Below are positions 688 to 43,519 of a DNA stretch of 64,000 bases, in pieces. This stretch comes from Haliotis cracherodii (taxonomy: Eukaryota). Under the pieces are notes generated by a model. It was given only the letters and a program-made list of their open reading frames with translations. It had not been told where the DNA came from and ran no database searches. The number at the start of each line of letters is the position of its first letter. Positions within the stretch are counted from its first letter, which is position 1. A program made the position numbers and the translations under genes. Where the stretch lies: positions 29,636,001 to 29,700,000 of the forward strand of contig NW_027266270.1 of NCBI RefSeq assembly GCF_022045235.1. Reading direction: 5' to 3'.

Positions 688-755
688 CTTGAGAACAGTT
701 CACTTGTTAATGGTTCTCAGGTAGAAGGAGACTCAACGAATGAGATGTGCTCACT

Positions 756-3700
756 TACTTACTTACTTACTTACTTTGGAGATTTAACGTGCGCTTTCCG
801 ACTGATGCGTATTTCGCACACGGGCCCGGCCAGGCCATTTAATGTGTTTCCGAAAGGGGCGAGGGTGGTCTGTGCAACCCAAGAGGGGGCTTTAGGGGTT
901 GCTTATATAGAATTTGGGAATTTTGAGATTTGGAATAGATGCTGATGGGGTTGGGGAGGAGAACTAAGGGAGCTGGGTATGGTGGATGATTGTTTGTTTA
1001 TGTGATTTTGATTTGGTAGGTTATTATGGTTTTAGATGCGTTTTATTAGTTCCGTTTTTATTAAGAATACGCCTAAGGCCTTGAAGTTTTCTAGTTTATT
1101 TTGTGGGTTTAGTATTGCTTCTAGAGTGAGAGCCTTGTTTAGATTGAGGGTGGTTTGTAATGCGGTTCGATGTGTTAGGTAGTGTGTGCAGTGGATGAGT
1201 GCGTGTTCTGGGGTTTCTGGTTGTTTGCAGTGTGGGCAGTTACCTGTAGTGTGTTTTTTAAATTTTTTTAGGTGGTTATTTAGGTTGGTGTGTCCTGTTT
1301 GGAGTTTAGTGATTACTCTGTCGATTTTTTTTGATGGATGGAGAATTTTTGGTTTGGTTAGTGGTTTGCTGAGCACTCTTTTGATTTTGCTATTTGAGTT
1401 TAGATATAGGTTATGCCATTTTTTTGTGATTTTTTGTTTGTTTACACTTTTAATTTCTGTTTTTGAGATGGGTAAGTTTAAGCTTATTTCTGGGATTTTA
1501 AGGGATAGTTTAGCTGCTTTATCGGCGTTTTCATTACCGTATATTCCTACGTGGGCGGGTATCCACAAGAAGGTTATTTGTTTGCCTGCTTTTGTTAGGT
1601 CGTTGGAGCTTTTAAGTATTTGATTTATTAATTTAGGTCGGTTTTTGGTATTTTTGTTTTGGAGGGCTTGTAGTCCACTTAGGGAGTCAGTAAGTATTAG
1701 GATTTTTTGGTTGTTTTTGGATTCTTGATTGTGGAGGGCTGAGGCCATGCCCATTAGTTCGGCCGTGAATATTGATTGGTTATTTGGGAGTCGGAAGGAT
1801 TGTGTGGTTTTAGTTGGTTGTGTGGTATGGACTCCGAAACCCGTGTGTTTGGAGGTCGGATCTGAGGATCCGTCCGTGTAAATGTGACACCAATTTGGCC
1901 AATTTTTGTGTATGTATGCTAGTGTGGTAGTTTTAGCTATGTTTGGGTCGGTTTGTTTATTTATTTGGCTAGCTAGTGTTGTGTCTATTTTGGGTATTTT
2001 AAGTTTAGGGGTGAAGATATTTGATTGTTTGCAGTTTTGTTTAAGATTTTTAATTTGGTGTTCATTTAGGTAGTTTGTTATTCTTTGGGATATTGGGGTA
2101 AGTAAGGGGTGTTTACGAGCTAGAGCTTGGTTTTTAGGGCTGATGTTTTGGTTTATTAAGTTTTGGATGAGAGGGTTTGATTGGGACGCGGCCCAGAAAT
2201 TTAAGCTTAGCTGTTCCCTGCGTAGACTTAGTGGCATTTCTCCTGTTAAGGCCTGAAGTGAGGTGTAGGAGGTGCCATGTTGGGTGCGTGTAATGAGTTT
2301 GAGAGCCTGATATTGTATTGAGTCAAGTTTTTTGGATAGAGAGTTGTTTAGGGTGTTGTATATGGCGCAGCCGTAGTCTAGTTTTGATCTAATTAGGGAT
2401 ATGTAGAGAGAGAGGAGAGTATCTTTGGAGGCTCCCCAGTTAGAGCCAGTTAGGCATCTTAGGGTGTTTAGGTCTTTACTGCATTTAGTTGTTAGGTTTT
2501 GGATGTGAGCATCCCAGGTGAGATGTTCATCGAAAATAAGTCCTAAGAATTTGGTTTGTTTTTGAAATTTGATTGTTTGGTTGTTTAGCTGGAGGATTGG
2601 GGAGGCGGGTTTCATGTTTTTATGTTTGAATACTATTCCTGTTGTTTTTTCTGAGTTAAGGGAGAAGCCCCATTTGTCAGCCCATTGTTGTATTTTATTA
2701 AGAGATTTTTGGAGTAGATTTGTGGCCATTTTCATGCTTTTAGTGCGGATCCAGATGGCTCCATCATCCGCGAATTTTGATGTGTTTACTTTAGGGGATA
2801 GACCCTCGAATAGATCGTTTATCATTATATTGAAGAGGGTGGGGCTGAGGATACTGCCCTGTGGAGTGCCATTTTCTAGGGGACATTGGTCCGATAGAGT
2901 TTGGTCTATACACACGGTTATTTTACGATTGTTTAGGAAGTCCTGGATGTAGTTTATTATCTGACCTTTGAGTCCTATTTTTTTAAGTTTTTGTATTAGC
3001 CCATCGTGCCATACCATGTCGAAAGCTTTAGAGAAGTCTAAGAAGATGCCTGTGGTATATTGTTTATTTAGTTGTCCTGTCTTAATATCTTGTTCTAGTC
3101 GGGCGAGGTTATCTAGGGTTGAGCGGCCAGGAGTGAAACCGCTTTGATCTGGGTTTATGGTGTTATTTTGGGTTAAGTAATGTTGTAATCTATTTTTAAC
3201 CATTGATTCCATTACTTTACATAAGTTTGAAGTTAGGGATATTGGTCTATATGAGTTAGCTTGATTAGCTGGTTTATTAGGTTTAGGGATTGGTATGACT
3301 AGGGCCTGTTTCCAGGGTGTAGGAACCTGTCCGTTTAGGTAGATGAGATTGTATAGTTTGAGTAGTGCCTGGAGCAGTTTTAGGGGGAGTTTTTTAATTA
3401 TTTGGTAAGAGGTTAGGTCTAATCCTGGGGCTGTGCCCTTTTTCCTGTTTTGGATTACGTAGAGGAGCTCCTCCATTGTGTAGGGTTGATTTATTTCTAG
3501 ATTGTTATTGTTTGGTTCTTTTGTGGGTTTGTTTTCTGTTTTAAGTTTATCTTGGAATTTTTGGCTGAAGTTGCTGTTACTGCTAACGGCCGAAAAGTGG
3601 TTGGCGAGATTATTTGCTTTTTGGGCGGGGTTGGTTGAGTTGTTAATGTTAGGTTTTTTTTTATGTCGTTTTAAGCCTCTAATGGCGTGGATTTTGCGCC

Positions 3701-4703
3701 AGACCGTTCTGGCATCTGTACGGTTATTTATACCTTCGCAGAATTTTTTCCAGTCTCTACTTTTGGCTATTTGGACTAGTTTTTGAACCTGGTGGTTTAG
3801 TTCGTGGGCTATGTTTAAATATTTGTAGTCGCGTTTTGCTTTATTGAAGGCTGATTTACGTTTTCGTCTAGTCTGTTCTATTTCCTCATTCCACCATGGT
3901 ACCGTCGGTTTGCCTGTCTTAGATACTTTGAAGGGGATGGAGGTTTTGGCTGCGTTTATTATATAGTCTGTTAGGTTTTTACAATAGGTTTCTGGATCAT
4001 TATTTTCTATTTCGTTTAAGTTAGCTTCGTTGCAGATATCTTGGAATTGGTCCCAGTTAGCTTTGTTGTAATGGAATTTTGGTTCTTGGTTTTCTGTTTG
4101 GATTGGTACGTTTGTATTTCCTATGGTTATGTTTATGGGGAAGTGGTCGCTACCTAGCGGGACGTCGTGCACTTCCCATTGAGTGCTTTGGGCTAGATCT
4201 GCGGTGCATATGGTTAGGTCGATAGCCGACATTTTTTGGTTTATCTTATCGTACCTCGTGGGTTGGTTGCTATTAAGGAGTACTAGGTCGTTTGTTTCTA
4301 TCCATTCGGAGATTAATTTGCCATGAGTATCTATTTTATCATCTATGCTCCATGTAGGATGGTGAGCGTTAAAGTCTCCTAGGAATATAGTAGATTTATC
4401 GCTTATTTTGAGTAGTTTGTTTAGATCCTCAGGTTGGACTTTTTGTTCCGCCCAGTGGTAAATATTTATGATGTTTATGTTTCGGTTATTTAATGTGATT
4501 TTAATGCCGTTGGCTTCTAGGTTTGGCGTGTCTATTTTTATTTCTTCGTAATTTATATCTTCCCTGATAAATATGATTAGTCCTCCTGCGGCTCTTCTTG
4601 TTTTCGGTTTAGCTCTGTCAGTTCTAACTGAGTTGTAGTTAGGTAGTGTGAATTTCGATTTTTTTGAGAATTTGGTTTCCTGTATACAAGCAATGTGAGG
4701 GCC
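756..4703 (-). mobile_element. I-group non-LTR retrotransposon (subfamily A1), 5'-truncated, inserted at the copy-1 core promoter
   Basis: (TAAG)n 3' tail at ~756-775. TSD ATGTGCTCACT at 745-755 and 4704-4714. Near-identical to the element at 37141-42944. Confidence 0.95.
1032..4703 (-). CDS. LINE ORF2 (APE endonuclease, RT, RNase H, CCHC), open from the truncation point and lacking the first ~29 codons
   Basis: GDFNAH and SDHFPI (APE); YRPISL, QSGF, PQGSILSP, FADD (RT); YTDGS, TAEL, TDSLS, WIPAHVGIYGNENAD (RNase H); CPHCKQPETPEHALIHC. Confidence 0.93.
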   Translation of the reverse strand, partial: GPHIACIQETKFSKKSKFTLPNYNSVRTDRAKPKTRRAAGGLIIFIREDINYEEIKIDTPNLEANGIKITLNNRNINIINIYHWAEQKVQPEDLNKLLKISDKSTIFLGDFNAHHPTWSIDDKIDTHGKLISEWIETNDLVLLNSNQPTRYDKINQKMSAIDLTICTADLAQSTQWEVHDVPLGSDHFPINITIGNTNVPIQTENQEPKFHYNKANWDQFQDICNEANLNEIENNDPETYCKNLTDYIINAAKTSIPFKVSKTGKPTVPWWNEEIEQTRRKRKSAFNKAKRDYKYLNIAHELNHQVQKLVQIAKSRDWKKFCEGINNRTDARTVWRKIHAIRGLKRHKKKPNINNSTNPAQKANNLANHFSAVSSNSNFSQKFQDKLKTENKPTKEPNNNNLEINQPYTMEELLYVIQNRKKGTAPGLDLTSYQIIKKLPLKLLQALLKLYNLIYLNGQVPTPWKQALVIPIPKPNKPANQANSYRPISLTSNLCKVMESMVKNRLQHYLTQNNTINPDQSGFTPGRSTLDNLARLEQDIKTGQLNKQYTTGIFLDFSKAFDMVWHDGLIQKLKKIGLKGQIINYIQDFLNNRKITVCIDQTLSDQCPLENGTPQGSILSPTLFNIMINDLFEGLSPKVNTSKFADDGAIWIRTKSMKMATNLLQKSLNKIQQWADKWGFSLNSEKTTGIVFKHKNMKPASPILQLNNQTIKFQKQTKFLGLIFDEHLTWDAHIQNLTTKCSKDLNTLRCLTGSNWGASKDTLLSLYISLIRSKLDYGCAIYNTLNNSLSKKLDSIQYQALKLITRTQHGTSYTSLQALTGEMPLSLRREQLSLNFWAASQSNPLIQNLINQNISPKNQALARKHPLLTPISQRITNYLNEHQIKNLKQNCKQSNIFTPKLKIPKIDTTLASQINKQTDPNIAKTTTLAYIHKNWPNWCHIYTDGSSDPTSKHTGFGVHTTQPTKTTQSFRLPNNQSIFTAELMGMASALHNQESKNNQKILILTDSLSGLQALQNKNTKNRPKLINQILKSSNDLTKAGKQITFLWIPAHVGIYGNENADKAAKLSLKIPEISLNLPISKTEIKSVNKQKITKKWHNLYLNSNSKIKRVLSKPLTKPKILHPSKKIDRVITKLQTGHTNLNNHLKKFKKHTTGNCPHCKQPETPEHALIHCTHYLTHRTALQTTLNLNKALTLEAILNPQNKLENFKALGVFLIKTELIKRI

Positions 4704-4727
4704 ATGTGCTCACTACCATCCGTAGAG

Positions 4728-4980
4728 TTTTATACCCTACCCACCACTATGGGTTCATCGCCTTCGATCTATTGGCTGGAAGTACTCTTTGATCCCTGGC
4801 TTCTATTAGATAGTTATTTATTCTTTGATCTATGGTTTCACAAGCCCGTGTTTTTATAGCATTGTATAAACAGTGCCAACTGACTAATCTCCTCTACACC
4901 ATGAAGCCAATAAGCTGATTGGAATTAGGATTGGCCTCTAGATTGGTACTTGCTTTGATTACATTTAAGGATGATTGGGA
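4728..4980 (-). promoter_or_regulatory. Displaced promoter of homeobox copy 1 (TATA, CCAAT boxes, TCF-like sites)
   Basis: TATAAAA at 4734-4728; CCAAT boxes at 4771, 4907, 4918, 4930, 4942, 4974; CTTTGAT at 4787, 4823, 4953. Homologous to the upstream regions of the array copies. Confidence 0.65.
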
Positions 4981-4999
4981 TGTTTGGACAGTCGAGTCC

Positions 5000-6360: not shown

Positions 6361-6399
6361 TGTTTGGTATTTTCCACGGGATATTTTTGTCACTCTGAA

Positions 6400-13724: not shown

Positions 13725-14230
13725 AAGTGAGATGTGCTCACCTTCCAACTGTGGAGTTTTATGCTCTACTCACCTCTCTGGCGTCATCATCTTCAACCCC
13801 ATTGGCTGTAAGGACTCTTTGATCCATGGCTTCTTTTTGAACATTTAACTTTCTTTGATCTAGGGTTTCACTAACCAATTGCTTACTCTTTCTTTATAAC
13901 ACCAAGCCAATCAGCTAATTGGAATTAAGTTTGGCCTCTTGATTCGTCTTTGCCTTATCAACATTCAAGGATGACGAGATTATCGAGTTTTGATAGACGG
14001 TCCTTGAGTGTGTACATGACGGAAAGCGGTTGATGGGGGTTTCATTGGTTTCATTGATCTCTGGCTTCTTTAACGCTGTGTTCCCTTTATGTTTGATTGG
14101 CTCTGGTGTCTTTCGTGATACTGGTTAGTGTTTTGATAGCGTTAAACAAACATTTTCCTTTGGCGGGATTTCCTGATTGACGTATCTTTCTTTGATTTTC
14201 TCTGACACAAACCAATTAGTTTATTGGATT
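13725..14230 (-). promoter_or_regulatory. Predicted homeobox promoter (Inr-like TCACTT, CATAAAA box, CCAAT cluster, TCF-like sites), repeated in each unit
   Basis: CATAAAA at 13763-13757; CCAAT at 13801, 13875, 13907, 13918, ~14044, ~14096, ~14212, ~14223; CTTTGAT at 13817, 13853, 14190. Confidence 0.65.
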
Positions 14231-14411
14231 GATTGTTTCGACTACAAGTTGGGTTTTTCACATTAACGAATGATAATGATGTTTCGTACTACTATCTTAA
14301 GCAGCTGAACGCAACGTTAAATTACACCCAGACTACACTCTGCGGAGTTGTGGGTAGAATATTTGCATAGCAAGCATAGTACATTATAAACAATATTGTA
14401 GTCAATGCGTA

Positions 14412-15845
14412 GGGCCGCGTCCCAATCAAACCCTCTCATCCAAAACTTAATAAACCAAAATATCAGCCCCAAAAACCAAGCTCTAGCACGTAAACACCCC
14501 TTACTTACCCCAATATCCCAAAGAATAACAAACTACCTAAATGAACACCAAATTAAAAATCTTAAACAAAACTGCAAACAATCAAATATCTTCACCCCTA
14601 AACTTAAAATACCCAAAATAGACACAACACTAGCTAGCCAAATAAATAAACAAACCGACCCAAACATAGCTAAAACCACCACACTAGCATACATACACGA
14701 AAATTGGCCAAATTGGTGTCACATTTACACGGACGGATCTACAGATCCGACCTCCAAACACACAGGTTTCGGAGTCCATACCACACAACCAACTAAAACC
14801 ACACAATCCTTCCGACTCCCAAACAACCAATCAATATTCACGGCAGAACTAATGGGCATGGCCTCAGCCCTCCATAATCAAGAATAAAAAAAACACCAAA
14901 AAAATCTTAATACTTACCGACTCCCTAAGTGGACTGCAAGCTCTCCAAAATAAAAATACCAAAAACCGACCTAAATTAATAAATCAAATACTTAAAAGCT
15001 CCAACGACCTAACTAAGGCAGGCAAACAAATAACCTTCTTGTGGATACCCGCCCACGTAGGAATATACGGTAATGAAATCGCCGATAAAGCAGCTAAACT
15101 ATCCCTCAAAATCCCAGAAATAAGCTTAAACTTACCCATCTCAAAATCAGAAATTAAAAGTGTAAACAAGCAAAAAATCACCAAAAAATGGCATAACCTT
15201 TATCTAAACTCAAATAGCCAAATCAAAAAGTACTCAGCAAACCACTAACCAAACCAAAAATTCTCCATCCATCAAAAAAAATCGACAGAGTAATCACTAA
15301 ACTCCAAACAGGACACGCCAACCTAAATAACTATCTAAAAAAATTTAAAAACATACTACAGGTAACTGCCCACACTGCAAACAACTAGAAACCCAAGAAC
15401 ACGCACTCATCCACTGCACACACTACCTAACACATCGAACCGCATTACAAACCACCCTCAATCTAAACAAGGCTCTCACTCTAGAAGCAATACTAAACCC
15501 ACAAAATAAACTAGAAAACTTCAAGGCCTTAGGCGTATTCTTAATCAAAACGGAACTAATAAAACGCATCTAAAAACACTATTATCTACCAAATCAAAAT
15601 TACATAAACAAACAAACATCCACCATACCCAGCTCCCTTAGTTCTCCTCCCCAACCCCATCGGCATCTATTCCAAATCTCAAAATTCCAAAATTCTATAT
15701 AAGCAACCCCTAAAGCCCCCTCTTGGGTTGCACACACCACTTTCGCCCCTTTCGGAAACACATTAAATGGCCTGGGCGGGCCCGTGTGCGAAATACGCAT
15801 CTGTCGGAAAGCGCACGTTAAATCTCCAAAGTAAGTAAGTAAGTA
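14412..15845 (+). mobile_element. I-group LINE (subfamily A2), 5'-truncated (RNase H region to 3' end), defective
   Basis: TSD AGTCAATGCGTA at 14400-14411 and 15846-15857; (TAAG)n tail; premature stop and frameshifts. The empty site is visible in other units (e.g. ~20180). Confidence 0.95.
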
Positions 15846-18082
15846 AGTCAATGCGTAACGTTAGTAAACACAATTGTTGATCAATGTTATTCCCTATTTT
15901 GATTTATACCATATGTTCCCGTATATTGTTTTCACGTTAACAGTTGACTTGTTTGTTCGTGTGTTTGTGACAGTTGTCACCTGTGGGGCAGGATACGCTC
16001 ATCTTTTCGCCCAAACCTGGTGTCATCACTATTTGATACTGATGCATTAACGCATGCATTTGATATAGTCGGATTGGTGTAATGGACCTTTAGAAAAGAT
16101 TTCTTTGGATTAATATGAATTAATGTGCACATCCTTATATGTGATACTAGTGTTGAGGATGTGATGTTAACGTTGAATATTTGATATTAATGTTGAACGT
16201 ATCCTAGTTATGGTGAATGTATGTTTGGATGAGTATTACAGTTATATCGTGAGGTATACGACATGTCAGCTTGATGCATGTGAATTTGAAACATGTTTAA
16301 AGGTGTTTAAATTCTAAGCATGTTTGGATTAAGGGAATGTTGTGTTTAGGCTATGAAGCGATGGTTCATATCATGTGTTTAGAATCTAAACGAGTTTAGA
16401 CAGAACACACATATGTGCATACCGTTAAGGATCCAAACACGTTCCTAAACATGTTTTGTATGTGTTTACATTCTACACACATTTTTACAGTGTGGTTTAA
16501 GTGGTGAATTATATTAATTTGATAAGTATGCAATCTACCTGGCAGGATTAGTATTCGCTGTTTACTAACCTTCTGGCCGCTGTTACTAATTTAAGTTAGT
16601 CGAATCAACTAGACTTTTTTCTCAGTGTAGGGAATTAGTTAAACATAAGATAATAAGATAAACTGATTCCTTCCTGTTGAAAATGACTGACATACAAACG
16701 AATATGCGCATTTATTAGGCAGGATATGTTTGCGCTCACTTCTTCAAAACACGCTTTTGTAAAAGGGGAGTTGATAACTGATTTTAATGGATATTTTCAA
16801 TGATCCGCCAAAATCACGCATCAGACTCCATTGGGTGGAAAATGCAAAAGAGCAGTGACAAATGTGTAAATGGGTCACTGAAGAATCAGTGATAACGCCT
16901 GGTGTTCGCGAAAAAGCCATGTGAAGGAGCACATGCTTTTTGTGATAGTAATGTTAAATAAGTGATGTCAATTGTGAACGTTTCATAGTTGTGGGGATGT
17001 ATGTTTTAAGCAGTATTTCAATTGTATCGTTAGTTATAAGCCATGTCAGCTTGTTGTATGTGGACGACAAGTCCAAAGTGAAGCAGGCTTTAGATGTTTA
17101 CCGCCTCCGTAAAACCCTCGAGCTCGGACATGGCGTTGCTAAACTGTAACACATAATCAGGGCGAGTCTCGGATTCGAATCCATGTGATATTTATGCTGA
17201 ATGTGTGGTGCATAATGTTGAATGTGTTATAGTAAAGTAAACTGTACAAAATTCACGTTGCACGAGTCATAGTAGTGTAAAATTGCGATATTAATGTTGA
17301 TGTTATAGTTATGTCGGATGTGTTATAGTTATGTTGAGCTTTACTGCATATACGGTGATAATGTGTGATGCATAATGACATCCTACAACTGCCCAACTGT
17401 ATAATGCATACGTATCCTGGATAGACACCTTCCTTTTGATCTGCTTCTAGGAATGTGTACAATACAAGTGTTCCATGTTAGATTTCCGATCTCGCACCTT
17501 TGACATCGGTTGATATAGTCTCCATATAAACCAGTTTGTTTAAATATCGATATATGTATGTGTGTATTTGTGTGTGACTTGTGTATTAGCATCATATTAT
17601 TTGCAACAGCAGGTACAATTATTCCTAATTTATTATTTTATGTTCACTTTACTCTTATTGATTGTTAAATGTCCTTTGTAGGGACAGGTGTTCAAATAGG
17701 TTTAACCAGTTAACCAATCTCGTTCCTTTTTGGTAATAAATATTGTTTAAGTCATAGTCTCCATATTCAGTAATGACATATCTAAGGAACAATACAATTC
17801 TAAAACTGTGTATTAATGTGACATATTTTATTTGTCATCAAAACAATAATAACAACTTCAGCACTCACATCCACAAATATCACAGTTATAGCACAGAATA
17901 AAGATAATATAGCACTATGTTTCAGACATGGGGATTGATGTTATACAAGTGACGGTCCTCTTGAACATATATATTGCTCTTAAAGGTATTTCCAATAGCA
18001 CTACGAGGGTCTCAGACATTATCATACAGACTTCATATTTGATATCAGTTACTATCATTCAAGTGATATTATCGTCCATATT

Positions 18083-32263: not shown

Positions 32264-32344
32264 CTTGGATTTGAAGAACGGTTTGTTCAAGGTTCTGAGG
32301 TAGCTGTGTATCAACAGACTCAACAAGTGAGATGTGCTCACCTT

Positions 32345-33328
32345 ACTTACTTACTTACTTACTTACTTTGGAGATTTAACGTGTGCTTTCCGACAGGTGC
32401 GTATTTCGCACACGGGCCCGCCCAGGCCATTTAATGTGTTTCCGAAAGGGGCGAAAGTGGTGTGTGCAACCCAAGAGTGGGCTTTAGGGTTTGCTTATAT
32501 AGAATTTGGGAAGTTTTTGAGATTTGGAATAGATGCCGATGGAGTTGGGGAGGAGAACTAAGGGAGCTGGGTAGGGTAGATGTTTGTTTGTTTATGTGAT
32601 TTTGATTTGGTAGGTTATTGTGTTTTTAGATGCGTTTTCCGTTTTGATTAAGAATACGCCTAAGGCCTTGAAGTTTTCTAGTTTATTTTGTGGGTTTAGT
32701 ATTGCTTCTAGAGTGAGAGCCTTGTTTAGATTGAGGGTGGTTTGTAATGCGGTTCGATGTGTTAGGTAGTGTGTGCAGTGGATGAGTGCGTGTTCTTGGG
32801 TTTCTAGTTGTTTGCAGTGTGGGCAGTTACCTGTAGTGTGATTTTTTAAATTTTTTTAGGTGGTTATTTAGGTTGGTGTGTCCTGTTTGGAGTTTAGTGA
32901 TTACTCTGTCGATTTTTTTTGATTGATGTAGAATTTTTGGTTTGGTTAGTGGTTTGCTGAGCACTCTTTTGATTTGGCTATTTGAGTTTAGATATAGGCT
33001 ATGCCATTTTTGTGATTTTTTGCTTGTTTACACTTTTAATTTCTGATTTTGAGATGGGTAAGTTTAAGCTTATTTCTAGGATTTTGAGGGATAGTTTAGC
33101 TGCTTTATCGGCGTTTTCATTACCGTATATTCCTACGTGGGCGGGTATCCACAAGAAGGTTATTTGTTTGCCTGCCTTACACTAAATGGTCTGGCCAGGC
33201 CCGTGTGCGAAATTCGCTACAGTCGGAAAGCGCACGTTAAATCTTCTATATCAGTCAGTCAGTCAGGGTATCTTTGGAGGCTCCCCAGTTAGAGCCAATT
33301 AGGCATCTTAGGGTGTTTAGGTCTGTAC
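32345..33328 (-). mobile_element. I-group LINE (subfamily A2), 5'-truncated and internally deleted; first member of the stack
   Basis: (TAAG)n tail abuts TGCTCACCTT (32335-32344), which recurs at 33329-33338. About 825 bp are deleted internally and replaced by a foreign fragment. Confidence 0.9.
33180..33266 (+). mobile_element. 3' terminus of a third related LINE family or LINE-tailed SINE, with a (TCAG)4 tail
   Basis: AAATGGTCTGGCCAGGCCCGTGTGCG...CAGTCGGAAAGCGCACGTTAAATCT matches the A/B 3' motif but with distinct variants and a different tail; opposite orientation. Confidence 0.8.
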
Positions 33329-33338
33329 TGCTCACCTT

Positions 33339-36300
33339 ACTTACTTACTTATATTGGAGATTTAACGTGCGCTTTCCGACTGCAAGCGTATGTCGCACAC
33401 GGGCCCGGCCAGGCCATTTAATGTGTTTCCAAAAAGGGGAAAAGTGAGTTTGTGCAACCCAGGAGGGGGGCTTTAGGGGTTGCTTATATAGTAATTTTGA
33501 AATTTTGAGATTTGGAAAGAATGCCAAGAGTGGGTGGGGGACGAACTAAGGGAGCTGTGTGTGTTGGGTGGTTATTAAATAAGGTAGTTTTGGTTTTAAT
33601 ATTTTATTTGGTGTTTAAATGCGGCTAATTAGTCCCGTTTTTATTAGGTATATGCCTAAGGCTTTGAATTTTTCTAATTTATTTTGTGGATTTAGGATTG
33701 ATTCTAGTGTAAGTCCGGTTTTAAGATTTAGGGTGGTCTGTAGTGTTGTTCGGTGTGTTTGGTAGTGTGTGCAGTGAATGAGTACGTGTTCTGGTGTTTC
33801 TTGTTGTTTGCAATGTGGACAGTTTCCTGTTTTGTGTAGATTAGCTATTTAACGGTGATTATTTAGTTTGGTATGGTCTGTTTGTAGTTTGGTAATTATT
33901 TTGTCGATTTGTTTGGATGGGTGTAGTATTTTGGGTTTATTTAGGGTTTTTTTGAGTACTTTCCTGATTTGGCTATTTGAGTTTTGGTATATATTTTGCG
34001 ATTTTTTGTTGATTTTTTGTTTAGTGACACTTTTGATTTCTGATTTTGAGCTGGGTAAGTTTAAGCTTATTTCTGGGAGTTTAAGGGATAATTTTGCTGC
34101 TTTATCTGCCTTTTCATTGCCAAAGATTCCTACGTGGGCGGGGATCCAAATGAAATTTATTTGTTTACCTAACTTAGTTAAGTTGTTTGAGCTATTGAGT
34201 ATTTGATTTATTAGTTTGGGGCGGTTTTTAGTGTTTTTATTTTTGAGGGCTTGTAGTCCACTGAGGGAGTCGGTTAGGATGAGGATTTTTTGGTGTTTTT
34301 TAGATTGCTGATTGTGTAGTGCTGAGGCAATGCCCATTAGTTCGACCGTGAATATGGATTGGTTGTTTGGGAGTCGGTAAGATTGTGTGTCTTTGGTTGG
34401 TTGTGGGATGTGGACTCCGAAACCTGTGTGTTTTGAGATCGGATCTGAGGATCCGTCTGTGTATATGTGACACCAATTTGGCCAATTTTCATGTATGTAT
34501 GCTAGTGTGGTGGTTTTAGCGATGTTAGGATCGGTCTGTTTATTTAGTGTATCGGCTAGTGTTGTGTCTATTTTTGGTATTTTAAGTTTTGGAGTGAAGA
34601 TATTGGATGATTTATTGTTTTGTTTAAGATTATTTATTTTGTGTTCATTTAGGTAATTGGTTATTCTTTGGGAAATTGGAGTAAGTAGTGGATGTTTCCG
34701 GGCTAGGGCTTGGTTTCTAGGGCTAATATTTTTTTTTATTAAGTTTTGGATGAGAGGGTTTGATTGGGACGCGGCCCAGAAGTTTAGGGTAAGTTGTTCC
34801 CTACGTAGTTTAAGTGGCATTTCTACTGTTAAGGCCTGGAGTGAGGTGGAGGAGGTGCCATGTTGAGTTCGTGTGATTAGTTTGAGGGGCCTGATACTGG
34901 ATTGAGTCTAGTTTTTTAATGAGAGAGTTGTTTAAGGTGTCGTAAATGGCACTGCCATAGTCTAGTTTGGATCTAATTAGTGATATATAGAGTGAGAGGA
35001 GAGTGTTTTTAGAGGCCCCCCAGTTGGAGCCGGTAAGGCATCTTAACGTGTTTAGGTCTTTGCTGCATCTGGTTACAAGGTTTTTAATGTGAGCATCCCA
35101 GGTGAGATGTTCATCGAAGATTAATCCTAAGAATTTGGTTTGTTTTTGGAATTTGATTGGTTTGTTGTTTAGTCGGAGGTTTAGGGAGGCGGGTTGCTTA
35201 TTTTTGTGTTTAAATACTATTCCTGTGGTTTTTTCTGAGTTTAGGGAGAAGCCCCATTTGTCAGCCCATTTTTGTATTTTATTTAGAGATTTTTGTAGTA
35301 AGTTTTGGGCCATTTTAATGCTTTTAGTGCGGATCCAGAGGGCTCCATCATCCGCGAATTTTGATGTGTTTACTTTGGGGGATAGTCCCTCGAATAGATC
35401 GTTAATCATAATATTGAAGAGTGTTGGGCTTAGGATACTGCCCTGGGGAGTGCCATTTTCTAGGGGACATTGGTCCGATAGCGTTTGGTCTATGCCCACG
35501 GTGATTTTGTGGTTTGTTAGGAAACTTTGGATGTAGTTAATTATTTGACCTTTAAGACATATTTTTGAAGTTTTTGTATTAGCCCGTTATGCCAAACCAT
35601 GTCGAATGCTTTGGAGAAGCCTAGAAAGATAACTGTAGTATATTGTTTGTTAAGTTGGCCTGTTTTAATGTCCTGCTCTAGTCGGGCGAGGTTATCTAAG
35701 GTTGAGCGTCCAGGAGTGAAACCGCTTTGGTCTGGATTTATTATGTTGTTTTGTTCTAAGTAGTGTTGTAACCTGTTTTTTGCCATTGATTCCATTACTT
35801 TGCATAAGTTAGAAGTTAGGGAGATTGGTCTGTATGAATTAGCCTGGTCAGCTGGTCTATTGGGTTTGGGGATTGGTATGACCAGGGCTTGTTTCCAAGG
35901 TGATGGGACCTGTCCGTTTAGATATATGAGGTTATAGAGTTTCAGAAGAGTTTGGAGTAGTTTGGGTGGTAATTGTTTAATTATCTGGTATGAAGTAAGC
36001 CTGGGGCTGTGCCCTTTTTCCTATTTTGTAGGACGTGGAGTAGTTCTTCCATTGTGAAATGGAGATTAATTTCTAGGTTATTATCTTTTGGCTCTTTGGT
36101 AAATTTGGTTTCTGATTTTAGTTGTTCCTGGAATTTTTGATTGAAGTTGCTATTCCTACTGACGGCCGAGAAGTGATTTGCTAGGTTATTAGCTTTTTCA
36201 GTGGGGTTTGTTGAATTGTTTATGTTGGGAGTTTTTTTTATGACGTTTAATGCCCCTATTGGCGTGGATTTTGCGCCAAACTGTTCTGGCGTCTGTATGA

Positions 36301-37128
36301 TGGTTAATTTCTTCGCAAAAAATTTTCCAGTCTCTTGTTTTAGCTGTTTTAACTAAGCTTTGTACTTTGTGATTTAGTTCACGTGCTATCTTTGGGTGTT
36401 TGAAGTCACGTTTGGCTTTATTGAATGCGGATTTGCTTTAACGCCTAGTTTGTTCTATCTCCCCGTTCCACCAAGGAACCGAGGGTTTGCCTATGCTGGT
36501 TATTTTGAAAGGAATGGAGTTTTTAGCTGCGTTTATCATGCAGTCAGTGGGGTTTTTGCAGTAGATTTCGGGGTCGTTACTTTCTAGGTCAGCTAGGTTA
36601 GCCTGGTTGCAAATTTCCTGAAATTTGTCCCAGTCGGCTTTGTTGAAGTGGAATTTAGGTTCCTGGTTTGGGGCTGGTGTTGGGATGTTTACGTCTCCTG
36701 TAGTTATATTTATGGGGAAGTGGTCACTACCTAGTGGTACCCCGTGTACTTCCCATTGAATACTTTGGGCTAAATCTGGGGTGCATATGGTTAAGTCGAT
36801 AGCCGACATTTTGTGGTGTATTTTGTCGTATCTAGTAGGTTGGTTGTTATTTATTAGTATTAGGTCATTTTGTTCTATGCATTCTGAGATGAGTTTTCCG
36901 TGTTTATCTATTTTATCTTCTATACCCCAGGTAGGGTGGTGGGCATTAAAGTCTCCTAGGAAGATTGTAGATTTATTGCCTATTTGGTGGAGGGTGTTTA
37001 AATCCTCAGGTTTGACCTGTTTTTCTACCCAGTGGTATATATTTATGATATTAATTTTTTGGTTGCTATTTGTTATTTGGATACTGTTTGCTTCTAGGTT
37101 TGGTGTGTTTATTTTTAGTTCTTTGTTC
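33339..37128 (-). mobile_element. I-group LINE subfamily B (clearly diverged from A), 5'-truncated in the APE domain, multiply frameshifted; second member of the stack
   Basis: ORF2 fragments at 36438-37130, 35541-35795, 34810-35499 and 33849-34820 carry the same APE/RT/RNase H motifs. (AAGT)n tail. Flanked by ACTGCTCACCTT at 33327-33338 and 37129-37140. Confidence 0.93.
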
Positions 37129-37411
37129 ACTGCTCACCTTACTTACTTACTTACTTTGGAGATTTAACGTGCGCTTTCCGACTGATGAGTATTTCGCACA
37201 CGGGCCCGGCCAGGCCATTTAATGTGTTTCCGAAAGGGGCGAGGGTGGTCTGTGCAACCCAAGAGGGGGCTTTAGGGGTTGCTTATATAGAATTTTGGAA
37301 TTTTGAGATTTGGAATAGATGCCGATGGGGTTGGGGAGGAGAACTAAGGGAGCTGGGTATGGTGGATGATTGTTTGTTTATGTGATTTTGATTTGGTAGG
37401 TTATTATGGTT

Positions 37412-40400
37412 TTAGATGCGTTTTATTAGTTCCGTTTTGATTAAGAATACGCCTAAGGCCTTGAAGTTTTCTAGTTTATTTTGTGGGTTTAGTATTGCTT
37501 CTAGAGTGAGAGCCTTGTTTAGATTGAGGGTGGTTTGTAATGCGGTTCGATGTGTTAGGTAGTGTGTGCAGTGGATGAGTGCGTGTTCTGGTGTTTCTGG
37601 TTGTTTGCAGTGTGGGCAGTTACCTGTAGTGTGTTTTTTAAAAAAATTTAGGTGGTTATTTAGGTTGGTGTGTCCTGTTTGGAGTTTAGTGATTACTCTG
37701 TCGATTTTTTTTGATGGATGTAGAATTTTTGGTTTGGTTAGTGGTTTGCTGAGCACTCTTTTGATTTGGCTATTTGAGTTTAGATATAGGCTATGCCATT
37801 TTTGTGATTTTTTGTTTGTTTACACTTTTAATTTCTGATTTTGAGATGGGTAAGTTTAAGCTTATTTCTGGGATTTTGAGGGATAGTTTAGCTGCTTTAT
37901 CGGCGTTTTCATTACCGTATATTCCTACGTGGGCGGGTATCCACAAGAAGGTTATTTGTTTGCCTGCCTTAGTTAGGTCGTTGGAGCTTTTAAGTATTTG
38001 ATTTATTAATTTAGGTCGGTTTTTGGTATTTTTGTTTTGGAGGGCTTGCAGTCTACTTAGGGAGTCAGTAAGTATTAAGATTTTTTTGTGGTTTTTGGAT
38101 TCTTGATTGTGGAGGGCTGAGGCCATGCCCATTAGTTCTGCCGTGAATATTGATTGGTTATTTGGGAGTCGGAAGGATTGTGTGGTTTTAGTTGGTTGTG
38201 TGGTATGGACTCCGAAACCTGTGTGTTTGGAGGTCGGATCTGAGGATCCGTCCGTGTAAATGTGACACCAATTTGGCCAATTTTTGTGTATGTATGCTAG
38301 TGTGGTAGTTTTAGCTATGTTTGGGTCGGTTTGTTTATTTATTTGGCTAGCTAGTGTTGTGTCTATTTTGGGTATTTTAAGTTTAGGGGTGAAGATATTT
38401 GATTGTTTGCAGTTTTGTTTAAGATTTTTAATTTGGTGTTCATTTAGGTAGTTTGTTATTCTTTGGGATATTGGGGTAAGTAAGGGGTGTTTACGAGCTA
38501 GAGCTTGGTTTTTGGGGCTGATGTTTTGGTTTATTAAGTTTTGGATGAGAGGGTTTGATTGGGACGCGGCCCAGAAATTTAAGCTTAGCTGTTCCCTGCG
38601 TAGACTTAGTGGCATTTCTCCTGTTAGGGCCTGAAGTGAGGTGTAGGAGGTGCCATGTTGGGTGCGTGTAATGAGTTTGAGAGCCTGATATTGTATTGAG
38701 TCACGTTTTTTAGATAGAGAGTTGTTTAGGGTGTTGTATATGGCGCAGCCGTAGTCTAGTTTTGATCTAATTAGTGATATGTAGAGAGAGAGGAGAGTAT
38801 CTTTGGAGGCTCCCCAGTTAGAGCCAGGTAGGCATCTTAGGGTGTTTAGGTCTTTACTGCATTTAGTTGTTAGGTTTTGGATGTGAGCATCCCAGGTGAG
38901 ATGTTCATCGAAAATAAGTCCTAAGAATTTGGTTTGTTTTTGAAATTTGATTGTTTGATTGTTTAGCTGGAGGATTGGGGAGGCGGGTTTCATGTTTTTA
39001 TGTTTGAATACTATTCCTGTTTTTTTTTTCTGAGTTAAGGGAGAAGCCCCATTTGTCAGCCCATTGTTGTATTTTATTAGAGATTTTTGGAGTAGATTTT
39101 TGGCCATTTTCATGCTTTTAGTGCGGATCCAGATGGCTCCATCATCCGCGTATTTTGATGTGTTTACTTTAGGGGATAGACCCTCGAATAGATCGTTTAT
39201 CATTATATTGAAGAGGGTGGGGCTGAGGATACTGCCCTGGGGAGTGCCATTTTCTAGGGGACATTGGTCCGATAGAGTTTGGTCTATACCCACGGTTATT
39301 TTACGATTGTTTAGGAAGTCCTGGATGTAGTTTATTATCTGACCTTTGAGTCCTATTTTTTTAAGTTTTTGTATTAGCCCATCGTGCCATACCATGTCAT
39401 AAGCTTCAGAGAAGTCTAAGAAGATGCCAGTGGTATATTGTTTATTTAGTTGTCCTGTCTTAATATCTTGTTCTAGTCGGGCGAGGTTATCTAGGGTTGA
39501 GCGGCCAGGAGTGAAACCGCTTTGATCTGGGTTTATGATGTTATTTTGGATTAAGTAATGTTGTAATCTATTTTTAGCCATTGATTCTATTACTTTACAT
39601 AAGTTTGAAGTTAGGGATATTGGTCTATATGAGTTAGCTTGATTAGCTGGTTTATTAGGTTTAGGGATTGGTATGACTAGGGCCTGTTTCCAGGGAGTAG
39701 GAACCTGTCCGTTTAGGTAGATGAGATTGTATAGTTTGAGTAGTGCCTGGAGTAGTTTTAGGGGGAGTTTTTTAATTATTTGGTAAGAGGTTAGGTCTAA
39801 TCCTGGGGCTGTGCCCTTTTTCCTGTTTTGGATTACGTAGAGGAGCTCCTCCATTGTATAGGGTTGATTTATTTCTAGATTGTTAATGTTTGGTTCTTTT
39901 GTGGGTTTGTTTTCTGTTTTAAGTTTATCTTGGAATTTTTGGCTGAAGTTGCTGTTACTGCTAACGGCCGAAAAGTGGTTGGCGAGATTATTTGCTTTTT
40001 GGGCGGGGTTGGTTGAGTTGTTAATGTTAGGGTTTTTTTATGTCGTTTTAAGCCTCTAATGGCGTGGATTTTGCGCCAGACCGTTCTGGCATCTGTACGG
40101 TTATTTATACCTTCGCAGAATTTTTTCCAGTCTCTACTTTTGGCTATTTGGACTAGTTTTTGAACCTGGTGGTTTAGTTCGTGGGCTATATTTAAATATT
40201 TGTAGTCGCGTTTTGCTTTATTGAAGGCTGATTTACGTTTTCGTCTAGTCTGTTCTATTTCCTCATTCCACCATGGTACCGTCGGTTTGCCTGTCTTAGA
40301 TGTTTTGAAAGGGATGGAGGTTTTGGCTGCGTTTATTATATAGTCTGTTAGGTTTTTACAATAGGTTTCTGGATCATTATTTTCTATTTCGTTTAAGTTA

Positions 40401-41167
40401 GCTGCGTTGCAGATATCTTGGAATTGGTCCCAGTTAGCTTTATTGTAATGGAATTTTGGTTCTTGGTTTTCTGTTTGGATTGGTACGTTTGTATTTCCTA
40501 TGGCTATGTTTATGGGGAAGTGGTCACTACCTAGCGGGACGTCGTGCACTTCCCATTGAGTGCTTTGGGCTAGATCTGCGGTGCATATGGTTAGGTCGAT
40601 AGCTGACATTTTTTGGTTTATCTTATCGTACCTCGTGGGTTGGTTGCTATTAAGGAGTACTAGGTCGTTTGTTTCTATCCATTCGGAGATTAATTTGCCA
40701 TGATTATCTATTTTATCATCTATGCTCCATGTAGGATGTTGAGCGTTAAAGTCTCCTAGGAATATAGTAGATTTATCGCTTATTTTGAGTAGATTGTTTA
40801 GATCCTCAGGTTGGACTTTTTGTTCCGCCCAGTGGTAAATATTTATGATGTTTATGTTTCGGTTATTTAATGTGATTTTAATGCCGTTGGCTTCTAGGTT
40901 TGGCGTGTCTATTTTTATTTCTTCGTAATTTATATCTTCCCTGATAAATATGATTAGTCCTCCTGCAGCTCTTCTTGTTTTCGGTTTAGCTCTGTCAGTT
41001 CTAACTGAGTTGTAGTTAAGTAGTGTGAATTTCGATTTTTTTGAGAATTTGGTTTCCTGTAAACAAGCTATGTGAGGGCCTTTATTTAGTTTAAATTTAG
41101 TTTTTAGTTCATGGCCGTGGGAGGTGAGTCCGTTGGCGTTCCACTGAAAAATATTTAGTCCTTCCAT
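37412..41167 (-). CDS. LINE ORF2 (APE-RT-RNase H-CCHC) with several homopolymer frameshifts
   Basis: Begins MEGLNIFQWNANGL...ACLQET (APE N-terminus); ORF pieces at 39875-41167, 37791-39854 and 37412-37756. Breaks fall in A/T runs and may be real or sequencing errors. Confidence 0.88.
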
Positions 41168-41210
41168 TATTGGTTTCGGGTGATTGGTGATTTAGTTTTT
41201 AGTTTTTATT

Positions 41211-42853: not shown

Positions 42854-42944
42854 ATTGTTTGGGTGTTGTGTTGGAGAGCGTGTGTTGTGGTAAGTGGTGG
42901 TGGAGTGTTTTGGGGAGGTGAGTTGGTTTGTTGTTTTTACTTGG

Positions 42945-43330
42945 ACTGCTCACCTTCCATTTGTGGAGTTTTATGCTCTACTAACTTCTTTCGCTTCATC
43001 ACCTTAAACCTCATTGGCTGTAAGGACTCTTTGATCCATGGCTTCTATTTGAACATTTAACTTTCTTTGATCTAGGGTTTCACTAACCAATTAACTACTT
43101 TTTCTTAACAACATCAATCCAATCAGCTGATTGGAATTTCAGCGATCTCTGGCTTCTTTAACACTGCGCTCCCTTTATGTTTGATTGGCTCTGGTTTCTT
43201 TCATGTCTCGTGTCATTGGTTAGTGTTTTGACAGCGTTAAACAAACAGTATCCATTGGCGGGATATTCCTGATTAGCTTATCTTTCTTTGATTTTCTCTT
43301 TTACAAACCAATCAGTTTATTGGATTGTTT
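42945..43330 (-). promoter_or_regulatory. Original promoter of homeobox copy 6, now directly upstream of the full-length LINE
   Basis: Homologous to 13741-14230. CATAAAA at 42975-42969, CCAAT at 43013, CTTTGAT at 43029, 43065 and 43286. Confidence 0.75.
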
Positions 43331-43519
43331 GTCTCGATTGTGTTTTCAACATTTAAGAATGAAAAAATTGTTTTGCTGTTGTATTGGTTTAAGGGAAATA
43401 TCACGAAACACTGTCGTAAGCAGCTGAACTTAACTTTTAATTACACCCAGATTACAATCTGCAGTGTTGCGGATACATTATGTACATAGAAGCGTAGTAA
43501 ATGCTATTGTAGTCAAGGG

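What the first reader, a model, noticed from the sequence alone, without database searches (positions are those of the whole stretch)
745..4734. Independent hit at the same promoter position in a diverged paralog, with identical 31-nt TATA spacing
The copy-1 promoter differs substantially from copy 6 (TATAAAA...GGTAGTGAGCACAT versus CATAAAA...GGAAGGTGAGCACAT, with a 1-nt indel). The inserted A1 element is nevertheless nearly identical to the full-length one, and has its own TSD (ATGTGCTCACT) and its own 5' truncation, so it is a separate recent event. The 5' junction is 31 nt from the first TATA base here (4734 to 4703) and in copy 6 (42975 to 42944). Conserved distance despite different target sequence points to position-dependent targeting, e.g. 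tethering to TBP/TFIID or an open pre-initiation complex, rather than pure sequence recognition (inference).
Basis: partly seen in the sequence, partly recalled or inferred. Interest (0 to 1): 0.8.

Follow-up and report, generated by a model that had tools for sequence, protein, structure and literature searches.

The report
LINE that lands behind TATA boxes
A young jumping gene (a LINE) in this mollusc genome inserts about 20 to 30 bases downstream of TATA boxes, which explains why it struck the same promoter spot of two related homeobox genes in separate events.

Summary
The two promoter hits are real and independent. Copy 1 holds a 5'-truncated LINE (756-4703) with an 11-nt TSD. This insertion is absent, as a precise empty site, from contigs of two other runs of the same species and one of a sister species. 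The copy-6 site holds at least three stacked insertions, and four identical copies of a 10-nt TSD separate and flank them.

The "identical 31 nt" is only partly right. In copy 6 the target ends 29 nt from the first box base, and two filler bases make it 31. The steadier measure is the first-strand nick, 20 nt (copy 1) and 19 nt (copy 6) after the first box base.

A TATA-like box lies at this distance in 34 of 50 full-length 5' flanks (controls 2-9 of 50) and in 13 of 29 TSD-defined sites. A cross-validated matrix gives the same result.

The element is a dispersed APE-RT-RNase H LINE with an (AAGT)n tail and at least 1682 copies. It is not site-specific. Whether TBP or the element's own protein reads the box is undecided.

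Earlier notes of this scan (s1-826202, s1-844812) reached the same reading on this genome. Four literature searches found no such LINE described.

The parts
4728..4734 (-). TATAAAA box of the copy-1 TALE homeobox promoter. Its first T (4734) lies 20 nt before the TSD start and 31 nt before the first element base.
4704..4714 (-). Upstream copy of the 11-nt TSD (AGTGAGCACAT on the gene strand) of the copy-1 insertion.
   Evidence: The empty allele joins 744 to 4704.
756..4703 (-). Copy-1 LINE, 5'-truncated. It covers positions 2623-6570 of a 6574-bp genomic full-length copy at 99.8% identity. It has an (AAGT)n tail and an open 1066-aa frame (1032-4232).
745..755 (-). Downstream copy of the 11-nt TSD of the copy-1 insertion. 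Its first 3 nt (AGT) could equally be tail.
42969..42975 (-). CATAAAA box of the copy-6 promoter. It lies 19 nt before the TSD start.
42947..42956 (-). First (promoter-side) copy of the 10-nt TSD AAGGTGAGCA of the copy-6 stack.
42945..42946 (-). Two filler bases between the TSD and element C. They match neither the target nor the full-length element.
37141..42944 (-). Element C, the unit nearest the TATA box. It covers full-length positions 780-6568 at 98.06% identity with 26 gaps, and its ORFs are broken.
37131..37140 (-). Second copy of the 10-nt TSD, between C and B.
33339..37130 (-). Element B, a diverged subfamily (82.7% to the full-length copy). It is 5'-truncated at about full-length position 2780.
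33329..33338 (-). Third copy of the 10-nt TSD, between B and the A unit.
32345..33328 (-). Composite A unit. It consists of a 3' part of the LINE (to 33175, 95.4%), an inverted 66-nt 3' fragment of a related (TCAG)n-tailed family (33179-33244) and a 67-nt internal fragment (33265-33331).
32335..32344 (-). Fourth (gene-side) copy of the 10-nt TSD of the copy-6 stack.
13735..13763 (-). Empty homologous site in paralog copy 2, running from CATAAAA to AAGGTGAGCA. The same sequence is found at 19513-19541, 23847-23875 and 28162-28190.
14385..15857 (+). A third insertion of the family, outside any TALE promoter. Its parts are TATAAAC at 14385-14391, a 12-nt TSD at 14400-14411 and 15846-15857, and the element at 14412-15845 (full-length positions 5132-6569, 96.2%). 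Here the box is 15 nt, not 20 nt, before the TSD.

Best explanation
The element is an active, dispersed APE-RT-RNase H LINE that chooses its integration sites by distance from a TATA-like box.

Shown:
- The first (bottom-strand) nick falls 19-21 nt downstream of the first T of the box, on the side to which the A-rich half of the box points.
- The nicked DNA usually shares 1-4 nt with the (AAGT)n RNA tail, which suggests that the tail pairs with the nicked strand to prime reverse transcription.
- The second nick follows 8-14 nt (mode 11) further on, so the 5' junction ends up about 30 nt behind the box.

The two TALE promoters carry a box at this distance from an AAGT-like site. They were therefore hit separately at the homologous position. 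The copy-6 site was hit at least three times with the same two nick positions, each newcomer probably entering next to the box.

Inferred: the box is most likely read while occupied by host TBP or a TBP-containing promoter complex, or at least in open promoter chromatin, and not as naked sequence alone.

Also inferred: because full-length copies begin with an initiator-like CAGTT, landing 30 nt behind a box rebuilds a TATA-plus-initiator promoter for the new copy.
For: Family.
- 1682 exact hits of the 3' end, and 40 of 40 scored copies 100% identical over 300 nt.
- Pfam finds APE, RT and RNase H domains.

Distance rule.
- TATAWAW with at most 1 mismatch starts at -36..-24 from the 5' junction in 34 of 50 non-redundant full-length flanks. 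Eight control windows give 2-9 (P about 1e-19). A perfect box is present in 17 of 50, against 0-3 in controls.
- With one flank per related target group the count is 26 of 42.
- In TSD-defined sites a hit starts at -22..-18 from the TSD start in 13 of 29, against a control mean of 1.6 (P about 1e-9).
- The matrix at -20..-13 reads TATAAAAA and carries almost no G or C at -19..-14.
- The cross-validated matrix gives 19 of 47 best hits in place, where 3.9 are expected.
- Orientation is asymmetric: ATAAA/ATAAG against TTTAT/CTTAT is 19:5 and 14:2.
- Tail microhomology is present in 28 of 29 sites.

Independence of the two promoter hits.
- The TSDs, truncation points and subfamilies differ.
- The copy-1 site has an empty allele in X2, X3 and X10.

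Stacks.
- Four identical TSD copies lie at the copy-6 site.
- 14 of 91 full-length starts are preceded by another element's tail plus a spacer of 4-12 nt, mostly 10-11.
- 4 of 39 copies sit directly upstream of an older copy.

For occupancy rather than sequence alone (inference).
- The genome holds 162,647 sites with a perfect box plus an AAG/AGT-type triplet at the right distance. At most 1682/162,647, about 0.01 insertion per such site, is therefore expected.
- Occupied sites are nevertheless re-hit at 10-20%.
- 2 of only 7 TALE promoters took at least 4 events.

Promoter rebuilding.
- Full-length copies start at CAGTTGCAG.
- Internal monomers carry TAAAAAAT 28 nt before the next CAGTT.
Against: - No protein-DNA or protein-protein data exist, so the TBP part is not tested.
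- Several targets look unlike promoters. L007 lies in what reads as a coding stretch of another element, and its box is only TGATAAG.
- About a third of the sites have no box within 1 mismatch, and a few are off the rule: -15 for the insertion at 14412, -11, -7 and -40.
- L009 and L037 show duplications of about 28 nt.
- Re-use of occupied sites could partly reflect selection: insertions into intact promoters are removed, while later hits on already broken sites survive.
- No special DNA-binding or factor-binding domain was found in ORF1 or ORF2.
- Transcription of full-length copies from the captured box was not tested.
Confidence: 0.5

Rival explanations
1. Direct readout: an element-encoded protein (ORF2p, or ORF1p in the RNP) itself binds the AT-rich, easily bent TATA-like sequence. 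It acts as a rigid ruler that places the endonuclease two helical turns downstream. No host factor is needed.
For: - Apart from the nick-site microhomology, the only conserved feature of the targets is the 8-nt box. No BRE-like or initiator-like columns stand out.
- Boxes in apparently non-promoter DNA and weak boxes are used.
- The ruler is tight, -19..-21 in most sites, as expected of one rigid complex.
Against: - ORF2 starts directly with the endonuclease and shows only APE, RT and RNase H domains. ORF1 has no recognisable DNA-binding fold.
- The information in the box and nick columns is a few bits. That would allow 1e5 or more equally good sites, which fits poorly with 10-20% re-use of occupied sites and at least 4 hits on 7 TALE promoters.
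Confidence: 0.35
2. Classical site-specific LINE: the endonuclease recognises the local sequence around GTGAGCA, which both promoters share. The TATA distance is then a by-product.
For: - Both promoter sites share GTGAGCACAT.
- The copy-6 site was cut at identical positions at least three times.
Against: - Among 39 other copies and 91 full-length starts the targets and TSDs are diverse and none repeats this sequence.
- Only the first 1-3 TSD bases show a bias, and it resembles the tail.
- The third insertion in the window has the TSD AGTCAATGCGTA.
Confidence: 0.03
3. One ancestral insertion was inherited by both paralogs or copied between them by gene conversion. A later deletion then produced the truncated copy.
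For: - The two elements are 98% identical while the promoters are 78% identical.
Against: - The TSDs differ in length and end points (11 nt against 10 nt). The truncation points differ (full-length positions 2623 and 780), and each abuts its own TSD.
- The copy-1 insertion is absent as a precise empty site from other individuals and from a sister species.
- Four intervening paralogs are empty.
Confidence: 0.01
4. There is no targeting. The LINE merely prefers AT-rich DNA, and a box near the junction is chance.
For: - Many LINEs favour AT-rich sites (recalled knowledge).
- The genome is about 60% A+T.
Against: - The enrichment is confined to one window, while flanking windows of the same sequences stay at background.
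- The columns next to the box are at background composition.
Confidence: 0.01

Closest known systems
Dictyostelium TRE5-A, a tRNA-gene-targeted non-LTR retrotransposon
   Same: It is an APE-type LINE that integrates at a fixed distance from a promoter element rather than at a fixed sequence. According to passages read in PMC5911963, TRE5 elements insert about 44-54 bp upstream of tRNA genes, and the ORF1 protein interacts with TBP, Brf1 and Bdp1.
   Different: Its target is the Pol III machinery on tRNA genes, in the opposite transcriptional orientation. Here the landmark is a Pol II-type TATA-like box, the distance is 20 nt, and the element lies in the same orientation as the box. No factor interaction is known here.
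Ty3 LTR retrotransposon of yeast
   Same: Integration is position-specific at a transcription start and guided by a TBP-containing factor. A passage in PMC5911963 says TBP and Brf1 are required in vitro. For the Ty3 structure paper I saw only the search listing.
   Different: Ty3 is an integrase-based LTR element aimed at Pol III genes. The present element uses target-primed reverse transcription.
Sequence-specific APE LINEs (R1, TRAS/SART, Tx1-type; recalled, no call)
   Same: They use one site repeatedly, form head-to-tail stacks and cut at reproducible positions.
   Different: Those elements have one long conserved target sequence. Here the targets are unrelated except for a degenerate 8-nt box 20 nt away.
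Drosophila I factor and jockey-type LINEs (recalled, no call)
   Same: They share the APE-RT-RNase H layout, an ORF1 with CCHC-type knuckles, a simple-repeat tail (I factor) and a 5' end that begins with an initiator-like CAGT. The atlas look-alikes of ORF1 are arthropod CCHC proteins.
   Different: Those elements are described as carrying an internal, TATA-less promoter and as lacking a TATA-distance rule. Clade membership of the present element was not tested by phylogeny.
Mouse L1 with monomeric 5' UTR (recalled, no call)
   Same: The 5' end is built of tandem promoter monomers. Here the monomers are about 236 bp: two in the standard copy and an extra one in 24 of 91 full-length starts.
   Different: The clade is unrelated. 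L1 target choice is set by a short motif at the nick.

Membership tests
Non-LTR retrotransposon (LINE) with APE-type endonuclease | Endonuclease/exonuclease/phosphatase-fold domain followed by a reverse transcriptase in one ORF | tested here: met
   Pfam Exo_endo_phos_2 (1.7e-19) at residues 113-227 and RVT_1 (3.4e-47) at 509-760 of the 1260-aa ORF2 of L008.
Non-LTR retrotransposon (LINE) with APE-type endonuclease | Variable 5' truncation, common 3' end and target-site duplications of variable length | tested here: met
   5' ends lie at many positions of the full-length copy and all share one 3' end. TSDs are 8-14 nt. A precise empty allele exists.
RNase H-bearing LINE group (I, Nimb, Ingi, Tad, LOA type) | RNase H domain downstream of the RT | tested here: met
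   Pfam RNase_H (8.8e-19) at residues 977-1103.
RNase H-bearing LINE group (I, Nimb, Ingi, Tad, LOA type) | Placement of the RT within a named clade by phylogeny | not tested
No reference LINE set was at hand.
RNase H-bearing LINE group (I, Nimb, Ingi, Tad, LOA type) | ORF1 with CCHC zinc knuckles | tested here: inconclusive
   Three Cys/His clusters are seen by eye in the 541-aa ORF1. There is no Pfam hit. The atlas look-alikes are CCHC-type proteins at score 0.93.
Site-specific LINEs (one conserved target sequence) | All or nearly all copies sit in the same target sequence | tested here: not met
   Flanks and TSDs of 39 copies and 91 full-length starts are diverse.
Factor-tethered, position-specific retroelements (TRE5-A, Ty3) | Integration at a fixed distance from a promoter element | tested here: met
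   The box lies 19-21 nt before the first nick and about 31 nt before the 5' junction.
Factor-tethered, position-specific retroelements (TRE5-A, Ty3) | Physical interaction of an element protein with the host factor, and loss of targeting when the factor cannot bind | not testable with these tools
   This needs binding and retrotransposition assays.
TALE-class homeobox gene (the host genes) | Homeodomain of the KN/TALE type | tested here: met
   Pfam Homeobox_KN (2.2e-12) at residues 349-388 of the 414-aa ORF at 12308-13549. Membership in the spiralian SPILE group was not tested.

The most novel reading that the evidence does not exclude
The LINE particle docks on TBP or the pre-initiation complex at TATA promoters that are active in germline or early embryonic cells.
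- It cuts the template strand about 20 nt behind the box, where promoter DNA is said to start melting (recalled).
- It cuts the other strand at about the transcription start. The TSD would then be roughly the promoter-bubble region.
- Each full-length copy arrives with its initiator-like first bases exactly 30 nt behind a working TATA box.

The element would thus carry no promoter for its first monomer. It would steal one at every jump and, in doing so, uncouple host genes such as these TALE homeobox paralogs from their core promoters.
Probability: 0.35. Interest if true: 0.9.

Novelty: new variant of a known kind. Interest (0 to 1): 0.8.

Why it matters
LINEs are thought to choose targets either by a few bases at the nick or by one long specific sequence. 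A family that measures its landing place from a Pol II-type TATA box would add a third mode.

The nearest known parallels are the tRNA-gene-targeted elements of Dictyostelium and yeast. In the four literature searches made here, no such mode for protein-coding-type promoters appeared.

It also offers a simple answer to the LINE promoter problem: land where a promoter already is.

It makes the family a precise promoter-breaking or promoter-hijacking mutagen. Here it sits between the TATA box and the start of recently amplified developmental homeobox genes, and one such insertion is still polymorphic in the species.

The rule is sharp enough (about ±1 nt) to be tested directly in vitro with and without TBP.

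Tried and rejected
Readings considered and rejected.
1. Shared ancestry or gene conversion of one insertion. Rejected because the TSDs and truncation points differ and an empty allele exists.
2. A strictly site-specific LINE aimed at GTGAGCA. Rejected by the genome-wide flanks.
3. Insertion into the tail of a resident copy as the cause of stacks. Rejected for the copy-6 stack and for 14 tandem cases, because a full TSD-length spacer separates the units. It may hold for L016, where a full-length copy and a 114-nt 3' fragment share one TSD.
4. General AT-richness. Rejected by within-flank controls.
5. Pairing of the element's 3' UTR RNA with the upstream target. The 3' end does carry TTAAAT about 10 nt before the tail, but columns -13 to -3 of the targets show no likeness to it.
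6. An orientation test with the reverse-complement heptamer was uninformative, because TATATA-type boxes match both ways (30 against 34 of 50). The asymmetric-word count replaced it.
7. Looking for a special domain. Pfam, PDB sequences and the protein atlas gave nothing beyond APE, RT, RNase H and CCHC-like look-alikes. No structure prediction was run.

Rows dropped before counts.
- Of 39 fetched copies, 11 were left out of the TSD-defined set. L001, L011, L016, L018 and L032 had no 5' flank in the locus or no TSD. L006 and L013 had a 6-nt TSD. L009 and L030 had none. L029 and L037 gave spurious matches.
- L005 (upstream is another element) and L025 (same target as L024) were also removed. Three window sites were added, giving n = 29.
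- Of 91 full-length starts, 14 tandem cases, 24 internal monomers, L083 and L124 (element-derived upstream DNA) and one near-duplicate were removed, giving n = 50.

Not done.
- No larger unbiased sample of truncated copies was fetched (see below).
- No reads were laid on the copy-6 stack.
- No RNA evidence was obtained.
- Supplementary files of papers were not consulted and might hold target-site tables of mollusc LINEs.

Full report
**What is in the window.**
The minus strand carries a tandem array of TALE-class homeobox paralogs. The 414-aa ORF at 12308-13549 gives Pfam Homeobox_KN at 2.2e-12. A 201-nt promoter probe finds only eight pieces in the 1.18-Gb genome, which amount to seven paralog promoters. 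Four of them, within the window, are empty. One more empty promoter lies 33 kb away on the other strand. Two are interrupted: copy 1 and copy 6.

The interrupting DNA is a non-LTR retrotransposon in the same orientation as the genes. It has an (AAGT)n tail.

**The observation.**
- In copy 1 the gene-strand target reads TATAAAACTCTACGGATGGT|AGTGAGCACAT|CTC.
- The 11-nt TSD lies at 745-755 and 4704-4714, and the element at 756-4703.
- This element covers positions 2623-6570 of a 6574-bp full-length genomic copy (L008) at 99.8% identity without gaps.
- In copy 6 the target reads CATAAAACTCCACAAATGG|AAGGTGAGCA|CAT.
- There the 10-nt TSD occurs four times, at 32335, 33329, 37131 and 42947, and delimits three units.
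  - C (37141-42944) covers full-length positions 780-6568 at 98.06% with 26 gaps.
  - B (33339-37130) is a subfamily only 82.7% identical.
  - The A unit is composite: a 3' part at 95.4%, plus an inverted fragment of a (TCAG)n-tailed relative and a 67-nt internal fragment.
- The spacing of 31 nt is exact in copy 1. In copy 6 the target ends 29 nt from the first box base, and two filler bases (42945-42946) bring the element's first homologous base to 31.
- The bottom-strand nicks are homologous, at 20 nt and 19 nt from the first box base. The top-strand nicks differ by 3 nt.

**Independence and age.**
Contigs of four public runs were laid on 600-4900.
- In X2 (record 16) and X3 (record 23), which have the same organism label but come from other studies, one contig joins 744 directly to 4704 with no differences. 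This is the precise empty site with one TSD copy.
- In X10 (organism B, record 9) the flanks are also contiguous without the element.
- In X1, possibly the assembly's own sample, a contig (record 8) spans the filled 5' junction.

The copy-1 insertion is therefore recent and polymorphic, and cannot be a copy of the copy-6 insertions. Contigs show presence, not absence, so zygosity in X1 is unknown.

**The family.**
- The last 300 nt give 1064 first-look candidates, and 40 of 40 scored are 100% identical.
- An exact 28-mer of the 3' end with tail occurs 1682 times.
- An exact 28-mer of the full-length 5' end occurs 91 times.
- ORF2 is 1260 aa. It opens right after the ORF1 stop without an ATG and has APE, RT and RNase H domains.
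- ORF1 is 541 aa. It has no Pfam or PDB-sequence match, and its atlas look-alikes are arthropod CCHC-type proteins.
- The full-length copy begins with CAGTTGCAG and carries two monomers of about 236 bp.
- In 24 of 91 cases the 5' 28-mer is preceded by a further monomer. Each monomer ends with TAAAAAAT 28 nt before the A of the next CAGTT.

*Set A.* Thirty-nine copies with 6.9 kb each were fetched and their junctions found by BLAST and TSD search.
- Twenty-nine sites, including three from the window, have a defined TSD.
- Aligned on the TSD start, columns -20 to -13 read TATAAAAA with almost no G or C at -19..-14. The neighbouring columns are at background.
- A heptamer TATAWAW with at most one mismatch starts at -22..-18 in 13 of 29 sites. 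Ten control windows give 0-6, with a mean of 1.6 (P about 1e-9).
- Among sites with such a hit, the first T is mostly at -19 to -21. The spread is tighter relative to the TSD start than relative to the 5' junction.

*Set B.* The 175-nt 5' flanks of all 91 full-length starts were fetched.
- Tandem cases (14), internal monomers (24), two element-derived flanks and one near-duplicate were removed, leaving 50.
- The heptamer starts at -36..-24 in 34 of these 50. Control windows give 2-9 of 50 (P about 1e-19). A perfect box occurs in 17 of 50, against 0-3.
- Keeping one flank per related target group gives 26 of 42 (P about 4e-14).

*Cross-validation and other features.*
- A matrix built from set A places its single best hit, out of 143 positions, within -37..-26 in 19 of 47 independent set-B flanks, where 3.9 are expected (P about 2.5e-9). 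The median implies a TSD of about 11 nt.
- The box is oriented: ATAAA/ATAAG against TTTAT/CTTAT is 19:5 and 14:2.
- In 28 of 29 sites the first 1-4 TSD bases could equally be tail. This fits priming by pairing of the (AAGU)n tail with the nicked strand.

*Exceptions.* About a third of sites lack a box within one mismatch. The third window insertion has its box at -15. L009 and L037 show duplications of about 28 nt.

**Stacks.**
- In 14 of 91 full-length starts the upstream DNA is the tail of another element followed by 4-12 nt, mostly 10-11. That is one TSD length. The upstream partners include the (TCAG)n-tailed family and a tail variant.
- Four of the 39 copies (L005, L013, L017, L022) sit directly upstream of an older copy in the same way.
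- This is what a box-measured rule predicts. Only the TSD copy next to the box keeps the right distance, so each newcomer enters between the box and the resident and recreates the same TSD.
- In copy 6 the unit nearest the box (C, 98%) is closer to the youngest copies than the distal A unit (95%). This fits the prediction but is a single case.

**How the box is read (inference).**
Sequence alone seems too weak a signal.
- The genome holds 162,647 sites with a perfect box and an AAG/AAT/AGG/AGT triplet at the right distance. Even if all 1682 copies had gone to such sites, each would have received about 0.01.
- Yet occupied sites are re-hit at 10-20%.
- Two of seven TALE promoters took at least four events.
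- A 1130-copy repeat with a TATATATG box took 5 of the 130 fetched copies.

Such heterogeneity suggests a further determinant: occupancy by TBP or a promoter complex, or open chromatin in the cells where heritable jumps occur. Purifying selection may contribute as well. It would remove hits on intact promoters and spare hits on transposon promoters and on sites that are already broken.

Some recalled knowledge fits this reading. In animal promoters the box starts about 30-31 nt before the start site. Melting is said to begin about 20 nt behind the box. The two nicks would then bracket the region from about -11 to +1.

By the abstract of PMC8524836, SPILE-type TALE genes act in early blastomeres of molluscs. 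Whether the window's genes belong to that group or are active then was not tested.

Against tethering: some boxes lie in unlikely promoters, and no interaction domain was found.

I put TBP- or occupancy-dependent reading at about 0.5, direct reading at about 0.35, and the distance rule itself at about 0.9.

**Promoter rebuilding (inference).**
Full-length copies start with an initiator-like CAGTT, and their 5' junction lies about 31 nt behind the host box. This is the same geometry as between monomers. A full-length insertion thus recreates a box-plus-initiator arrangement for its first monomer. Transcription from it was not tested.

**Comparison with what is known.**
The nearest parallels are Dictyostelium TRE5-A and yeast Ty3.
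- TRE5-A inserts about 44-54 bp upstream of tRNA genes, and its ORF1p binds TBP, Brf1 and Bdp1.
- Ty3 needs TBP and Brf1 in vitro.

These statements come from passages of PMC5911963. I saw PMC6101501 and the Ty3 structure preprint only as listing and abstract start. Both elements use Pol III promoters.

Four full-text searches listed no paper describing a LINE aimed at TATA boxes. I read only titles and abstract starts of those listings, no supplements, and most subscription journals are outside the library.

**Earlier notes of this scan.**
Notes s1-826202 (same window) and s1-844812 (another piece of this genome) state the same TATA-guided landing. I saw them after forming my reading and tested the claim on my own data.

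**Verdict.**
The agent that reads the box is open.

Noticed in passing
L008 (element 5' end, first about 370 nt); L040-L130: The full-length element has tandem 5' monomers of about 236 bp. 24 of 91 exact 5'-end matches are internal, meaning they are preceded by a further monomer. Each monomer ends with a TATA-like TAAAAAAT 28 nt before the next CAGTT.
   Followed up: partly
window 33179-33331: Inside the copy-6 stack lie an inverted 66-nt 3' fragment of a related LINE family with a (TCAG)n tail and a 67-nt internal fragment of the main family. This looks like an aborted or twin-primed event.
   Followed up: partly
L016 (G000:C12:16734858-16741957): A full-length copy is followed directly by a 114-nt 3' fragment with its own tail. 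One TSD (CGTAGCATTC) flanks the pair and none lies between them. This points to template switching or an insertion within a tail.
   Followed up: partly
L009, L037: Two copies show duplications of about 28 nt of the target. In L037 the duplication includes the TATA-like box. In L009 there is also an inverted piece of tail. Both are atypical integration events.
   Followed up: no
L030, L033, L035: Three copies are inserted in the antisense strand of the 5' monomer region of a diverged relative. They lie 20 nt behind a TATA-like TATATAATTA / TGATAGTTA that this antisense strand offers.
   Followed up: partly
L008 4359-4382 (minus strand): ORF2 has no ATG. Its frame opens a few codons after the ORF1 stop and starts directly with the endonuclease, so translation must use reinitiation or a non-AUG start.
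   Followed up: no
window 756-790 and all 3' ends: The element's own 3' end carries TTAAAT about 10 nt before the tail. With a short tail this would itself lie about 20 nt before the tail end and could guide a further insertion into the tail.
   Followed up: no
G000:C7:29602830-29603027: A seventh TALE paralog promoter (87% to copy 2) lies 33 kb outside the window on the opposite strand. Its site is uninterrupted.
   Followed up: no
window 31000-32265 and 12305-13549: The coding exon 2 of copy 6 is 99.4% identical to copy 2 without gaps, although its TATA box is now 10.6 kb away. The 414-aa ORF of copies 2-5 seems to read through what is an intron in copies 1 and 6, so the real gene probably has two exons.
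   Followed up: partly
genome-wide; flanks of L013, L039, L053, L072, L097: A repeat of about 1130 copies carrying TTACATGTACATATATATGCTCTCTGCC is a recurrent target of the LINE. Its nature (LTR, SINE or other promoter) was not determined.
   Followed up: partly
window about 43490-43720: By eye, a tRNA-like stretch (possible tRNA-derived SINE) lies upstream of the copy-6 promoter. It was not checked with the tRNA tool.
   Followed up: no
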